Below are positions 59,691-64,000 of a stretch of DNA of 64,000 bases, one piece after another. The notes beneath the pieces are model-generated. The model was given only the letters and a program-made list of their open reading frames with translations, was not told the DNA's origin and made no database searches. Source of the DNA: Setoptus koraiensis (taxonomy: Eukaryota; Animalia; Arthropoda); contig CM106586.1 in the NCBI GenBank assembly GCA_048013815.1, positions 3,224,001-3,288,000 of the forward strand, given 5' to 3'. A program made the translations under genes and the position numbers. Position 1 is the stretch's first letter. The number at the start of each line of letters is the position of its first letter.

Positions 59691-61046
59691 TTATATTAGA
59701 GTGACAACATATAGTTTGTTAACCTCATCGTATGACTCTACGAGAATGTTAAATAGCTCTTCGTCCTGCAATGCCTTATCTAACAAATCACTAGGACTCT
59801 TATGGCTGAATTTACATTTTATAGCGATAGCTGGTGTGTCTGTCAGCATGAGGCCTTTGGCAGAAATATCTCGCAAATTGTTCTTGGGCAAAATCTCCGT
59901 GCTGCCGAAGTCGATGTAATATACCTTACATTCTTCATCGTTGAGCACACTAACTACCATAGCTCTGTACCAGTTGCCATCGTCACAAGATAGGGCCATA
60001 TGTGTAGTACCAATGTCGATGTTGCGAGAGACTCCACTGGTCTCTATCTCGGTAACTATGTTGGTGACAATATCCAGTATATCTTTGAGCTTGTCGTTGT
60101 CATATGGTATGTAAACGACAAGTCTGTCGTTAGACTGCTCATCCGGTGACAACATACAAGTGGTGTAGCTTCTTCCTGGTACAACTAAACCTCTAGGTAA
60201 AGAGGCGAAAGGATCGATATTCTTAATGAGTTTTCTTATGGCTGTGTTAGGTTGTCTGATATTAGACAAGTTGACGTCCTGCCTAGTTTGCGGAATGTTA
60301 TCCTGCAACCCGTTAGATTCGACGATTTGCTTGGGTTGAGCAGACACATGTCTAACCACTATAGACGAATTCAATTGTTCAGCGGCTGCTCTTGGACTGC
60401 AATGGACATTATTAGCGTTAGTAGTTGTCAACTTTCTAGAGATATTTGGAGTTGACGATTTGTCCTGAATGGTCATGTTTTGGAGATCCAATTGGTTGAT
60501 TCCATTGTTGCTTGAATTGCCAGAATGGTTGCTTGAGACGCCCTTGGTACATTTAAGTTTGTGTTTTTCCCAATCAGCTTTTTGGCACCCGTCGCTGCAG
60601 TAGAGATCGCAAGCATCACTGTTGGTACAACTGGATCCCGAGCACACGTAGGCCAATTTTTTGTTACACGTGACACAGTGAATGGCCCTCAGAGGGGGTA
60701 TTTTATCCTCATAGTGTGGATTAACAATGGTGAGTTTACTTGTGATTACATGTATGTGCTTGGTTGAGCCAGGTTTGCCTCTGGGACAAAATTGGCAGTC
60801 TGATTCCTCTGATCTGAGAAATTGTGAGGCCAATTCGAGATTTTCTACCACTGAAGTAAGTTCTTCTAATGTCTTAAAATTAAACTTACGTGAAGAATCA
60901 ATCGTACGGTTGTCAACAATGATTGAGGATGATGAGTTGTTCATCATGGTCTTCGTTTTATCCTCTTCGCTTGAGTGCTTTTGTTCGTAAGTGTTGAACT
61001 CTCGGGTACCGTCCGGTCGTCTAGTTACTCTTATACCAGTTGGCAT
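59691..61046 (-). CDS. MYND zinc finger + single extended Tudor domain protein (TDRD1-like), intronless CDS; 5'UTR intron 61081..61198
   Basis: CVTC..CSGSSC..LYCSDGCQKADWEKHKLKC (MYND); DDGNWYRAMV..KVYYIDFGSTE..TPAIAIKCKF (Tudor). Confidence 0.85.
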   Translation of the reverse strand: MPTGIRVTRRPDGTREFNTYEQKHSSEEDKTKTMMNNSSSSIIVDNRTIDSSRKFNFKTLEELTSVVENLELASQFLRSEESDCQFCPRGKPGSTKHIHVITSKLTIVNPHYEDKIPPLRAIHCVTCNKKLAYVCSGSSCTNSDACDLYCSDGCQKADWEKHKLKCTKGVSSNHSGNSSNNGINQLDLQNMTIQDKSSTPNISRKLTTTNANNVHCSPRAAAEQLNSSIVVRHVSAQPKQIVESNGLQDNIPQTRQDVNLSNIRQPNTAIRKLIKNIDPFASLPRGLVVPGRSYTTCMLSPDEQSNDRLVVYIPYDNDKLKDILDIVTNIVTEIETSGVSRNIDIGTTHMALSCDDGNWYRAMVVSVLNDEECKVYYIDFGSTEILPKNNLRDISAKGLMLTDTPAIAIKCKFSHKSPSDLLDKALQDEELFNILVESYDEVNKLYVVTLI

Positions 61047-62345
61047 TATTTCGTTCAGGTATAGTGATCGCTACTATGGCCTGTTGTTGATTAGCAAGAA
61101 TATTTAACGTATATGGCAACGTATATGAAGATGTTAACAAATATAAATTATTATGTGACGTTATTATTTGAAGATATTGAGAGTTGAAAGGCGCTTACTG
61201 TGTAAAGACAAATGTATGAGTGAGAGAGAGGCAGTTCCCGGGATTATATTAAAATTGAGTCGGTTGAACGTGTGTGTGTGTGTGGCGCCCTCAATCTCAA
61301 GCTAGCGTTGTGAACATTTAAGAGTGAAATTCACAATAGAAATGCCTGTTGCACGTGTGGGCAAGAAGCAACCTGCGCAGAAATTGTTGAAAAATGTAAC
61401 TAATGAATTATCTAATTAGTTGGCCAGGCGCATGTTCATCGCGCATAGCAACAATTCAAAATGGTCTTGCTGCTTACAAGTGGTGGTGGGGGGAAAAATT
61501 CAGTCCCATGGCAGCATGGGTAGACGTGTCCCACGGCAGGCCGAAAATAGATAACTGACCTATTCTAACGATCAAACGTTCGTTTGAGCTTGACAATATT
61601 AATATGCCACCTCGAACTTTGGCTCTGCTGGTGTGATGATACAAACTTTCGTGACCATCAAGTATGGTCAACCTCACAGCAGTGTTATGTGCCCGCTGGG
61701 ATTGGTCAGTTTTTCATTTGCACCCTGTGCCTCTCACTCTGTCACGGCCGGCATGGAATTTGCGCCCCCTTCCATCAACAGCGAGCGGCAAGACCATTTT
61801 GAAATTGTTGCTATGCCTGATAAACACACGCTTGGCTCGTTGTGAATGTATTCATTGTTGCTGCGCAGGACATGTCTTGTCCACGTGTGCAACAGGCATT
61901 TCTATTGTGAATTTCACTCTTAAATGTTCACAACTCTAGCTTGAGATTGAGGGCGTCACACACACACACGTTCAACCTACTCAATTTTTATATTATATAA
62001 TCCCGGGAACTGCCTCTCTCTCACTCATACATTTGTCTTTACACAGTAAGCGCCTTTCAACTCTCAATATCTTCAAATGATAACGTCAATTAATAACGTC
62101 AAATAATGATTTATATATTTGACGTTATTAATTGACGTTATTATTTGATTTGTTAACATCTCCATATACGTTGCCGCTGTTAAATATTCTTGCTAATCAA
62201 CAACAGGCCATAGTAGCGACCACTATACCTGAACGAAATGCCTGCCGGTAAGAGGGTGACGATAGGATGCCTAAGACGATTGGATGCCCGTCGAGAGCTC
62301 AGCGATTACGAGCAAAAGATCCCAGGCGACGAAGAGAAAAGGATC
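60955..62345. repeat. ~1.4-kb degenerate inverted duplication (palindrome centred near 61630)
   Basis: 61047..61380 is the near-identical reverse complement of 61861..62237 (promoter, UTR, intron); weaker matches inside (61444..61475 vs ~61783..61815) and into both coding starts. Confidence 0.93.
62080..62141. repeat. Perfect 26-bp inverted repeat with 10-nt loop inside the 5'UTR intron 62046..62206
   Basis: ataacgtcaattaataacgtcaaata - atgatttata - tatttgacgttattaattgacgttat. Confidence 0.92.
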
Positions 62346-63068
62346 ATTGCCAAGACCGCCCTGTTGGGCATTTTCAAGCAACACGAACTGCTAACCTTAG
62401 AGATGTGCCTAAAAGAAGCTCTAGCGAGTGAACCTAGTCTCAAACAATTATACTGTACATTGGCCAACGAAGCCACTTTTGTCAAGCCTTCTCGGAAACA
62501 ACAATTTCTCACACGTACCAATGAAGACATACAAGAGGAAAAGAAGACACTCTTACAGATTGCCAACTTGAAATCTAAACTCACCACTTTGGATGCAAAA
62601 ATTGAGAAATTTTCTCTACTGAGAAACATAATTAGCGATCCACAACCTCGATTACTTGATCTCGAACTTTCACTAGATAATGAAATAATTCGTTCGAGGG
62701 GAATGAAGATGTTAATTAAATTGAATTGTGAAAGAATTAAGGACTCGTTCGATTATCTCGATGATGTACTCGAACCCAACCAACTTGTCGCACTTGTCAC
62801 CGTGGATTTGCAGAAATCGTCGGGCTATGACAGATTTATCAAAGATTTAGCTCTTTCAAAATCTACCCCTGATATTACAGTTATTAATGATGCCATTCAT
62901 CTTGAAGTAGAAAGACTGCTCCGCCCATTGAGTGTGCTGGTAAGAAAAATGGCCTGGATGTATAAATTTTACACTGAAATTCTACCAAAAGAGATGGAAT
63001 ACAGGCGCAAATTCCATTCAATTCTTGACGACGGAACGATATCAATAAAATTGACGACTACACGATAG
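62238..63068 (+). CDS. 276-aa orphan helical/coiled-coil protein sharing its N-terminus with the Tudor gene
   Basis: Open frame preceded by the duplicated promoter and UTR; MPAGKRVT....RRLDARRELSDYEQK aligns with MPTGIRVTRRPDGTREFNTYEQK. Confidence 0.75.
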   Translation: MPAGKRVTIGCLRRLDARRELSDYEQKIPGDEEKRIIAKTALLGIFKQHELLTLEMCLKEALASEPSLKQLYCTLANEATFVKPSRKQQFLTRTNEDIQEEKKTLLQIANLKSKLTTLDAKIEKFSLLRNIISDPQPRLLDLELSLDNEIIRSRGMKMLIKLNCERIKDSFDYLDDVLEPNQLVALVTVDLQKSSGYDRFIKDLALSKSTPDITVINDAIHLEVERLLRPLSVLVRKMAWMYKFYTEILPKEMEYRRKFHSILDDGTISIKLTTTR

Positions 63069-63257: not shown

Positions 63258-64000
63258 ATGTTCGAAATGCGATCATTCTTTTATGGGATCGTGATAACGT
63301 CCATTTTGTGGCTTCTGGCCCTATTTCTTATATTCCCAGTTGATTTTTGGACACGAACAAGCCACGAAGAATTTATTCACGATGGCACTAATCACAACAG
63401 AAGACTATCTAGGCGTCACCAGAAAGTGCAACATCATCGGAGTAACGCCGAATCTAGTCTAATTGAGTTCAGTTCAAAACATGAAATCTCGACCAGCATA
63501 GACAGCCTTCAGTCCGAGCTGATTCACATTGATTGGTTTTATCAATTCAATGTAAACGCGCCTAACACAACGGACAATCATCCTAAACTGGAACGTTTTA
63601 TATCTAAGGATGACCACGAAACCTCAACACAACGTTTGAGTATTATAAGGACCATATTAGACCAAAAGTTCAAATTGGCAGGATATAAGAGATTTGCATT
63701 TAATTTACTCATCTCAAATAGATTGGGTCTATTTCGTCCATTGCCTGATACTAGAAACGAACTATGTAAAAATGTTGAATATTTTGATGATCATTTATTA
63801 CCCACAGCATCTATTATCATATGCTATTACAATGAGGCACCTAGTGCCTTGATGCGAACCGTCTATACCATACTAGAACGGAGCCGTGGATTACCGTTGT
63901 TGGAGATAATTCTTGTCGATGACTTCAGTGATGACGAATTTACACGATACAACATGTCGGATTATGTCAAGTCTCCCCTTATAAGAATGTTGCGAACTCC
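63258..64000 (+). CDS. GALNT11: Polypeptide N-acetylgalactosaminyltransferase 11 (pgant35A)-like, truncated by the window end
   Basis: Type II TM MRSFFYGIVITSILWLLALFLIF; GYKRFAFNLLISNRLG..PDTR..C..LPTASIIICYYNE..LMRTV..EIILVDDFSD; frame open from ATG 63258 to the edge. Confidence 0.87.
   Translation, partial: MFEMRSFFYGIVITSILWLLALFLIFPVDFWTRTSHEEFIHDGTNHNRRLSRRHQKVQHHRSNAESSLIEFSSKHEISTSIDSLQSELIHIDWFYQFNVNAPNTTDNHPKLERFISKDDHETSTQRLSIIRTILDQKFKLAGYKRFAFNLLISNRLGLFRPLPDTRNELCKNVEYFDDHLLPTASIIICYYNEAPSALMRTVYTILERSRGLPLLEIILVDDFSDDEFTRYNMSDYVKSPLIRMLRT

What the first reader, a model, noticed from the sequence alone, without database searches (positions are those of the whole stretch)
60955..62345. 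Head-to-head gene pair on a giant palindrome: shared promoter, UTR intron and N-terminus, unrelated bodies
Seen: arms 61047..61380 and 61861..62237 are near-identical reverse complements containing a TATA-like element, a (CA)n tract, and a GT-AG 5'UTR intron at the same position; identity decays toward the centre (~61630). The proteins share about 35 N-terminal aa (MPTGIRVT----RRPDGTREFNTYEQKHSSEEDK vs MPAGKRVTIGCLRRLDARRELSDYEQKIPGDEEK), perhaps weakly to about 90 aa, then one becomes MYND-Tudor and the other an unknown helical protein. Non-coding arms are more conserved than the coding starts. Inference: inverted duplication created a chimeric or new gene, with arms kept alike by gene conversion or selection for co-expression; the pair may act as a two-component germline module via the shared N-terminal peptide.
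Basis: partly seen in the sequence, partly recalled or inferred. Interest (0 to 1): 0.8.

Follow-up and report, generated by a model that had tools for sequence, protein, structure and literature searches.

The report
Neighbour's promoter and start copied, flipped
In this tiny plant-mite genome an old helical-protein gene begins with a mirror-image copy of its neighbour's (a MYND-Tudor gene) promoter region, leader and first ~32 codons; the rearrangement is real and older than a species split, but it is a known kind that recurs in this genome.

Summary
Window 60950-62345 is one imperfect palindrome with its axis near 61640, and it is unique in the 48.7-Mb assembly. Arm identity is 91-97% over the non-coding stretch 61047-61383 / 61858-62237. 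It is 68% over the first ~92 coding bases and 61-66% in the centre. The two head-to-head ORFs share only residues 1-31/34 (BLASTP E 7e-6; profile E 4e-9). The suggested similarity out to ~90 aa is not supported.

Gene A (451 aa) has an N-module, a MYND finger and one germline-type Tudor domain. Gene B (276 aa) is not a new gene. From codon ~33 it is the genome's only member of an unnamed helical family with 26 distant relatives, none of which has this leader.

Orthologues of both genes in another species share the same N-terminus, with the same junction. So the capture is old, and the 93% non-coding arm identity needs later homogenisation. Gene conversion is the most likely cause.

The 5'UTR intron signals are present but untested. 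The "two-component germline module" idea has no support.

The scan had already found the same kind of neighbour front-end capture at several other loci of this genome.

The parts
59691..61046 (-). Gene A, 451-aa intronless ORF: N-module, MYND finger and one extended Tudor domain. Probable donor of the copied 5' end.
   Evidence: ORF. Pfam Tudor PF00567 E 9.5e-17; zf-MYND 17.7 bits, below the 22.7 cut-off. Nearest solved Tudor domains are Drosophila Tudor, TDRD1 and TDRKH. Orthologue P0002 is 68% identical.
60708..61046 (-). A's N-terminal module (residues 1-113), also present in a 189-aa paralogue elsewhere on the chromosome (L005:1501-2070).
   Evidence: the genome search own: 56% identity over residues 1-113. 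Alignment A3.
60549..60677 (-). MYND-type zinc finger of A (residues 124-166).
   Evidence: Pfam PF01753, E 0.0036, full-length match to the profile but under the curated cut-off.
59805..60113 (-). Tudor domain of A (residues 312-414).
   Evidence: Pfam PF00567 E 9.5e-17. PDB sequence matches.
60954..61046 (-). A codons 1-31: outer, diverged end of the left arm (the shared N-terminal peptide).
   Evidence: 68% DNA identity to the partner, z 14.9. BLASTP E 7e-6. hhalign E 4e-9.
61047..61383 (.). Left high-identity arm: A's leader, putative intron, core promoter and proximal upstream region.
   Evidence: 307 matches and 24 mismatches against the partner; JC distance 0.076.
61081..61198 (-). Putative 5'UTR intron of A (118 nt; GTAAGC ... 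CTAAT ... CAG).
   Evidence: Motif positions. Not tested with RNA.
61243..61249 (-). TATA-like element of A (ATATAAT).
61384..61857 (.). Diverged centre of the palindrome, axis about 61640-61645. It holds one strongly kept block (61443-61470 / 61788-61816).
   Evidence: 61-66% identity, z 31.6 against shuffles; direct-orientation control z -0.1. The kept block is visible in alignment A1.
61858..62237 (.). Right high-identity arm: B's proximal upstream region, core promoter, putative intron and leader.
61994..62000 (+). TATA box of B (TATATAA).
62046..62206 (+). Putative 5'UTR intron of B (161 nt). It contains both upstream ATGs (62077, 62106).
   Evidence: Not tested with RNA.
62073..62148 (+). 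Nested 33-bp perfect hairpin made by a 46-nt insertion present only in B's arm.
   Evidence: the repeat finder I6. RNA fold -42.3 kcal/mol, z -10.9. Only sub-threshold Rfam hits.
62238..62339 (+). B codons 1-34: the captured N-terminal peptide, outer end of the right arm.
   Evidence: It carries an in-frame 4-codon insertion relative to A.
62238..63068 (+). Gene B, 276-aa intronless ORF: captured leader peptide plus the helical family body.
   Evidence: ORF. Orthologue P0001 is 66% identical. AF2 model is all-helical, pLDDT 75.9.
62334..63029 (+). Part of B homologous to an unnamed helical family (26 distant relatives). B is the only member in this genome.
   Evidence: hmmsearch of 1.84 billion representatives. 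Alignment A6. The profile match in the own genome starts at window 62334 = codon 33, E 1.7e-52.

Best explanation
A fold-back (inverted) partial duplication copied the 5' end of the MYND-Tudor gene A and joined it in frame, at about codon 33, to the body of the neighbouring gene B. The copied piece comprised the upstream region, core promoter, leader with its probable intron, start codon and first ~32 codons. B is an older helical-family gene whose own variable leader and promoter were replaced. The result is two head-to-head genes, each with its own mirror-image core promoter and the same mRNA leader. The event happened before this species split from the species that carries P0001 and P0002. 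Since then the outer (coding) ends and the centre have drifted apart. The ~335-nt promoter/leader core has been repeatedly homogenised, most likely by arm-to-arm gene conversion. Conversion stops at the start codons, either because converted peptides are selected against or because the diverged coding sequence blocks heteroduplex extension. Shown here: the palindrome, the junction, B's family membership, and the age of the event relative to the second species. Inferred: the donor direction, gene conversion, co-expression and splicing of the leader intron.
For: The palindrome is real and single-copy in the genome. Homology between A and B is confined to residues 1-31/34. B's family homology starts at codon 33, exactly where arm homology ends. 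The 26 family relatives have unrelated leaders. The peptide is contiguous with an N-module shared by A and a second paralogue, L005, whose peptide is more distant from A (39-47%) than B's is (47-65%). This points to A as donor. Orthologues of both genes in another species share the peptide with the same end point (22/31, E 1e-10). So the duplication predates a split at which the proteins are only 66-68% identical. Synonymous divergence of the shared codons is about 1.05 and the centre has JC 0.52, but the promoter/leader core has JC only 0.076. The upstream DNA of paralogue L005 has lost all similarity to the arms. This shows how fast unconstrained, unconverted upstream DNA decays here. Other loci of the same genome hold inverted repeats at the places where the scan had noted the same kind of event.
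Against: So conversion cannot be separated from very strong purifying selection on the promoter and leader. The high-identity block ends within 3 nt of both start codons, which pure conversion would not predict and which needs an added selective argument. The donor direction rests on short peptides (about 30 aa) and on the absence of the peptide from distant B-family relatives. No RNA evidence was available for transcription starts, splicing or co-expression.
Confidence: 0.7

Rival explanations
1. There has been no gene conversion. The promoter/leader arms are alike only because nearly every base is under purifying selection for an identical regulatory function (co-expression of A and B).
For: The high-identity block coincides with a functional unit (proximal promoter to start codon) and ends within 3 nt of both ATGs. 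A kept block in the diverged centre (61443-61470 / 61788-61816) looks like a selected footprint.
Against: Identity of 96-97% extends through the putative intron, and overall (93%) exceeds that of the coding starts (68%). The duplication predates a species split with 32-34% protein divergence. The arms tolerate large indels (46 nt, 5 nt, 3 nt), which does not fit base-by-base constraint.
Confidence: 0.12
2. The direction is reversed. The peptide and promoter were B's, and were copied onto the front of an A-type ancestor, which later gave rise to the L005 paralogue.
For: B-family leaders are variable, so one of them could have been this peptide. The evidence for direction rests on about 30 residues.
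Against: None of the 26 B-family relatives has a similar leader. The peptide runs without a break into the N-module in both A and L005. L005's peptide is more diverged from A than B's is, which is the opposite of what a later A-to-L005 duplication predicts.
Confidence: 0.08
3. The palindrome is mainly a hairpin-RNA (endo-siRNA) source or a foldback transposable element, and the gene starts are incidental.
For: Two ~335-nt arms at 93% identity would form a long duplex if a single transcript crossed both. A nested perfect 33-bp hairpin lies in B's arm.
Against: The arm sequence occurs nowhere else in 48.7 Mb, so it is not a mobile family. The two core promoters point outward, so the normal transcripts carry the same-sense leader and not complementary arms. 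Rfam gives only sub-threshold hits to the small hairpin.
Confidence: 0.04
4. It is an assembly artefact: a chimeric fold-back read incorporated into the assembly.
For: Long-read assemblies can contain artificial palindromes. No reads were available to check this.
Against: Artefactual fold-backs are near-perfect. Here the arms differ by 7% plus indels, the centre is 61-66% identical, and each arm runs into a different intact gene. A second species has the same chimeric B protein.
Confidence: 0.02

Closest known systems
Partial/chimeric gene duplicates in inverted orientation next to the parent gene (surveys of young duplicates in C. elegans and human, as summarised in PMC4546093)
   Same: A short duplication covers only the 5' part of a gene, lies adjacent and inverted, and is fused to unrelated sequence, giving a structurally heterogeneous paralogue.
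   Different: Here the recipient is an intact pre-existing neighbour gene that keeps its whole conserved body. Only the promoter, leader and first ~32 codons are swapped, and the pair has survived a species split.
Palindromes whose arms are kept alike by arm-to-arm gene conversion (e.g. sex-chromosome ampliconic palindromes; own knowledge)
   Same: Inverted arms are far more alike than the age of the duplication allows, while the spacer/centre has diverged.
   Different: The scale is tiny (arms ~0.7 kb, homogenised core ~335 nt). The homogenised part is non-coding and stops at the start codons, and the two arms lead into unrelated genes.
Other neighbour front-end captures noted by this scan in the same genome (PAN3/Sirt1, eIF1/YTHDF, CKS1/cyclin B, URM1, DAD1/akirin, PNPT1/eIF3g, CAF-1 p60)
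   Same: Head-to-head neighbours have a mirror-copied upstream region, and often the start codon and first codons as well.
   Different: This case is shared with a second species. It has the sharpest contrast between a homogenised non-coding core and diverged coding ends. It includes a probable leader intron, and its donor is a Tudor gene.
Inverted duplications at inversion breakpoints made by staggered breaks (Drosophila; PMC3355041)
   Same: Inverted copies of gene 5' ends arise as by-products of a rearrangement.
   Different: Those copies flank the whole inverted segment. Here the arms meet at a common axis with homology running to the centre, as expected from a fold-back event.
TDRD1-type MYND + Tudor proteins of the piRNA pathway
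   Same: Gene A has a MYND-type finger followed by an extended Tudor domain. That domain is most similar to Tudor, TDRD1 and TDRKH.
   Different: A has a single Tudor domain and a lineage-specific N-module. No functional or expression data exist.

Membership tests
Chimeric partial gene duplicate (inverted, adjacent) | Two copies of one DNA segment, adjacent and in opposite orientation | tested here: met
   There are only two copies in the genome.
Chimeric partial gene duplicate (inverted, adjacent) | The copied segment covers only part of the donor ORF | tested here: met
   Homology ends at residue 31-34 of 451. Beyond that, DNA z = 1.7.
Chimeric partial gene duplicate (inverted, adjacent) | The remainder of the recipient comes from a different source | tested here: met
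   From codon 33, B matches a separate helical family.
Chimeric partial gene duplicate (inverted, adjacent) | The chimeric gene is maintained as a gene | tested here: met
   A full-length orthologue in another species is 66% identical and has the same junction. Transcription was not tested.
Palindrome maintained by arm-to-arm gene conversion | Arm identity higher than the age of the duplication allows | tested here: met
   The core has JC 0.076, against dS ~1.05 in the shared codons and JC 0.52 in the centre. The duplication predates a split with 32-34% protein divergence.
Palindrome maintained by arm-to-arm gene conversion | Arms group by species rather than by side when compared with a relative | not testable with these tools
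The metagenome scan found nothing.
Single shared bidirectional promoter | One compact control region drives both genes, with starts less than about 1 kb apart | tested here: inconclusive
   There are two mirrored TATA-like elements about 745 nt apart, at 61243-61249 and 61994-62000. The ATG-to-ATG spacer is 1191 nt. No transcription-start data were available.
Foldback or TIR transposable element | Multiple copies in the genome | tested here: not met
   The only matches are the arm itself and its partner.
TDRD1-like MYND-Tudor protein (gene A) | Extended Tudor domain | tested here: met
   PF00567 E 9.5e-17. PDB hits are Tudor, TDRD1 and TDRKH.
TDRD1-like MYND-Tudor protein (gene A) | MYND zinc finger | tested here: inconclusive
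   PF01753 matches the full profile length, but at 17.7 bits it is below the 22.7 cut-off.
TDRD1-like MYND-Tudor protein (gene A) | Several tandem Tudor domains | tested here: not met
   One Tudor stretch only.
Spliceosomal 5'UTR intron | GT...branch...AG signals plus a spliced transcript | tested here: inconclusive
   The signals are present and identical in both arms. B's two upstream ATGs lie inside the putative intron. The sizes (118 and 161 nt) fit the 170-nt median intron of a related mite (PMC7738191). No RNA data were available.

The most novel reading that the evidence does not exclude
Fold-back copying of a neighbour's promoter, leader and start may be a systematic mode of gene re-wiring in streamlined eriophyoid mite genomes. 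Under this reading, the palindrome here is actively kept by conversion or selection because it locks an old helical protein into the expression programme of a germline-type Tudor gene, with the shared N-terminal peptide serving as a common tag.
Probability: 0.12. Interest if true: 0.7.

Novelty: new member of a known kind. Interest (0 to 1): 0.42.

Why it matters
This is a cleanly delimited natural example of a gene acquiring a complete new front end (promoter, leader, probable leader intron, start codon and ~32 codons) from the gene next door. The junction is mapped to within about three codons. The recipient's ancestry is identified, and the event is shown to be older than a species split. 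Several similar loci occur in the same genome. Together they suggest that fold-back duplication at divergent promoters is a recurrent route of regulatory and N-terminal evolution in an extremely compact animal genome. The homogenised core next to decayed flanks also gives a built-in footprint of the sequences that matter for the promoter.

Tried and rejected
1. Extended A/B homology to ~90 aa: rejected. hhalign aligns residues 1-31 only, the weak BLASTP hit between L005 and B has E 0.24, and DNA beyond codon 34 gives z 1.7.
2. Transposon or foldback element: rejected, because the sequence is single-copy.
3. Naming B's family: all attempts failed.
   - Pfam on B and on all 29 family members gave only coiled-coil noise.
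   - The PDB profile search gave only coiled coils.
   - ESM Atlas gave nothing usable.
   - AF2 with two sequences failed (pLDDT 37).
   - AF2 with 29 sequences gave a usable helical model, but Foldseek and VIA wide (Z <= 7) gave only generic helical matches.
   - One weak row was an augmin subunit (E 3.9), which I do not take as evidence.
4. Cluster look-ups gave no names; all relatives come from Logan assemblies.
6. The word search with the 189-aa paralogue found nothing.
7. Upstream DNA of L005 compared with the arms: no similarity beyond a (CA)n run.
8. Rfam on the palindrome gave only sub-threshold plant-miRNA-like hits to the AT-rich nested hairpin.
The putative intron lies in the leader, so both proteins were searched as single ORFs by reference.
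Full report
**Setting.** Earlier notes of this scan call this genome an eriophyoid (gall/rust) mite. The assembly is 48.7 Mb in two contigs, and the window is G000:C2:3224001-3288000. Long intronless ORFs and short spacers fit what is published for a related mite. In Aculops lycopersici 84% of genes are intronless, the median intron is 170 bp, 5' introns are preferentially retained, and piRNA-pathway genes are present (PMC7738191).

**The observation.**
- The stretch 60950-62345 is one imperfect palindrome with its axis near 61640.
- The repeat finder reports arms of 61, 102 and 112 nt at 98, 97 and 90% complementarity.
- A global alignment of the left half against the reverse complement of the right half gives these identities:

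| Segment | Identity |
|---|---|
| First 92 coding bases | 68% |
| 61047-61110 | 97% |
| 61111-61147 | 83% (interrupted by a 46-nt indel) |
| 61148-61250 | 96% |
| 61251-61383 | 91% |
| Centre 61384-61645 | 61-66% |
| Beyond about codon 34 | 38-41% (background) |

- Against 500 shuffles, the local alignment score has z = 125 for the core, 31.6 for the centre and 14.9 for the first 34 codons.
- Codons 35-150 give z = 1.7, and a direct-orientation control of the centre gives z = -0.1.
- The arm sequence matches only itself and its partner in the whole assembly, so it is not a repeat family.
- It is the only inverted repeat of 50 nt or more, with arms within 5 kb, in the 64-kb window.
- A fold-back assembly artefact would be near-perfect. 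These arms differ by 7% plus several indels, and each runs into a different intact gene.

**The two genes.**
- Gene A (59691-61046, minus strand, 451 aa) has a Tudor domain (PF00567, E 9.5e-17).
- It also has a full-length but sub-threshold MYND match (17.7 bits against a 22.7 cut-off).
- Its Tudor domain is closest to Drosophila Tudor, TDRD1 and TDRKH among solved structures.
- The genome holds at least ten Piwi-domain genes. A role with PIWI proteins is a reasonable inference, but it is untested.
- A's first 113 residues form a lineage-specific module. That module also opens a 189-aa protein 3.8 Mb away (L005:1501-2070; 56% identity).
- Gene B (62238-63068, plus strand, 276 aa) has no Pfam family.

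**What is shared.**
- A and B align only over their first 31-34 residues: BLASTP 17/34, E 7e-6.
- A profile of A, its orthologue and L005, compared with a profile of B and its orthologue, gives E 4e-9 for residues 1-31 and nothing beyond.

**What B is.**
- A word search found one close relative, P0001 (265 aa, 66% identity).
- An exhaustive profile search of 1.84 billion representatives found 26 more distant relatives of 250-420 aa.
- These align with B from about residue 36 to 260. They share a conserved N-terminal helix-rich domain followed by coiled coil (alignment A6).
- Their own leaders are variable and unlike the A/B peptide.
- In the mite's own genome the family profile matches only B. 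The match starts at window 62334, which is codon 33 (E 1.7e-52). That is exactly where arm homology fades.
- So B is the genome's single member of an older family, with a replaced front end.
- I could not name the family. Pfam, the PDB sequence profile, ESM Atlas, Foldseek and VIA-align returned only generic helical or coiled-coil matches.
- The AF2 model built on the 29-sequence alignment is all-helical (mean pLDDT 75.9). The captured peptide is modelled at only about 42.

**Direction and age.**
- In both A and L005 the peptide runs straight into the N-module.
- L005's peptide is more distant from A's (39-47%) than B's is (47-65%).
- No B-family relative has the peptide.
- So A, or an A-type ancestor, is the likely donor, with probability of about 0.8.
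- The other species' proteins P0002 (A orthologue, 68%) and P0001 (B orthologue) also share the peptide: 22/31 identical, E 1e-10, ending at the same point.
- The capture therefore predates the split of the two species.

**Why the arms are still alike.**
- Between A and B, the 30 alignable shared codons have dS about 1.05 and dN 0.29. The palindrome centre has a JC distance of 0.52. The 335-nt promoter/leader core has only 0.076.
- The upstream DNA of the L005 paralogue retains no similarity to the arms (z below 2). This shows how quickly such DNA normally decays here.
- The core's identity runs through a putative intron, and the core tolerates 46-, 5- and 3-nt indels.
- An event older than a 32-34% protein divergence cannot have left 93% identical non-coding DNA by simple inheritance.
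- Arm-to-arm gene conversion is the economical explanation.
- Selection probably sets the sharp outer limit, because identity collapses within 3 nt of each ATG.
- Without the sister locus, selection alone cannot be excluded. I give it about 0.12.

**Anatomy of each arm, read in gene sense.**
1. A kept E-box (61352-61357 and 61882-61887).
2. A (CA)n run.
3. A TATA-like element (A: 61243-61249; B: 61994-62000).
4. About 45 nt that are identical between the arms.
5. GTAAGC (A: 61198; B: 62046).
6. A CTAAT branch-like site 12-13 nt before CAG (A: AG at 61081; B: AG at 62206).
7. A 33-36-nt leader and then the ATG.

The putative introns are 118 and 161 nt. B's only two upstream ATGs (62077, 62106) lie inside its putative intron, which favours splicing. 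A has no upstream ATG. None of this was tested with RNA. There are two mirrored core promoters about 745 nt apart, rather than one shared promoter.

In the diverged centre one block of about 28 nt is almost unchanged (61443-61470 and 61788-61816). It is a candidate common control site.

**Recurrence.**
- The scan's notebook lists the same kind of neighbour front-end capture at other loci of this genome.
- I fetched four of them and confirmed that inverted repeats lie where the notes say:
  - L011: 32-nt arms at 91% spanning both start codons of head-to-head ORFs.
  - L012: arms of about 700 nt at 95-99% identity.
  - L013: 33-nt arms.
  - L014: 65-nt arms (for L012-L014).
- I did not re-check the gene identities given in those notes.
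- The 46-nt insertion in B's arm is itself a small fold-back, giving a perfect 33-bp hairpin. This is in line with a genome prone to such events.

**Comparison with what is known.** Partial and chimeric duplicates, often adjacent and inverted, are well documented (summarised in PMC4546093). Palindrome arms homogenised by gene conversion are also known (own knowledge). This locus is a clear, old and well-delimited member of that kind.

**Points of interest.**
- The precise junction.
- The identified ancestry of the recipient gene.
- The non-coding-only homogenisation.
- The recurrence within one streamlined genome.

**Unsupported.** The idea that the shared peptide couples the two proteins has no support. 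In this species the peptide is somewhat less conserved in B (56%, against 66% for the whole protein), and it is modelled as disordered.

**Limits.** No reads or expression data were available. 

Noticed in passing
window 62073-62148: A perfect 33-bp hairpin (10-nt loop) made by a 46-nt insertion found only in B's arm, inside the putative leader intron. RNA fold -42.3 kcal/mol, z -10.9. Only sub-threshold Rfam miRNA-like hits. It looks like a miniature fold-back event nested in the larger one.
   Followed up: partly
L005:1501-2070 (G000:C2:7099914-7100480): A 189-aa ORF made of the same N-module as gene A (56% over 113 aa, with a kept C-x2-C ... H-x-H pattern) plus a short acidic helical tail. 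No relatives were found by the word search. The module is so far seen only in this mite and one relative.
   Followed up: partly
window 61443-61470 and 61788-61816: A block of about 28 nt kept almost unchanged inside the otherwise 61-66% identical palindrome centre. It is a candidate shared cis-regulatory site. A CACGTG E-box is also kept in both arms (61352-61357, 61882-61887), but it is shifted by 2 nt in the arm alignment.
   Followed up: no
P0003-P0029 (alignment A6): An unnamed family of helical proteins of roughly 320 aa with a strongly conserved N-terminal domain. There is no Pfam model, no solved structure and no source name. All members come from assemblies of sequencing runs (Logan), except one cluster from JGI/IMG and ENA. 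It may deserve a family description.
   Followed up: partly
window 63267-64000: An ORF starting only 200 nt downstream of B's stop, on the same strand and running off the window end, looked to me like a polypeptide GalNAc-transferase. This is my reading of the sequence and was not tested.
   Followed up: no
Only the repeat itself was re-checked here.
   Followed up: partly
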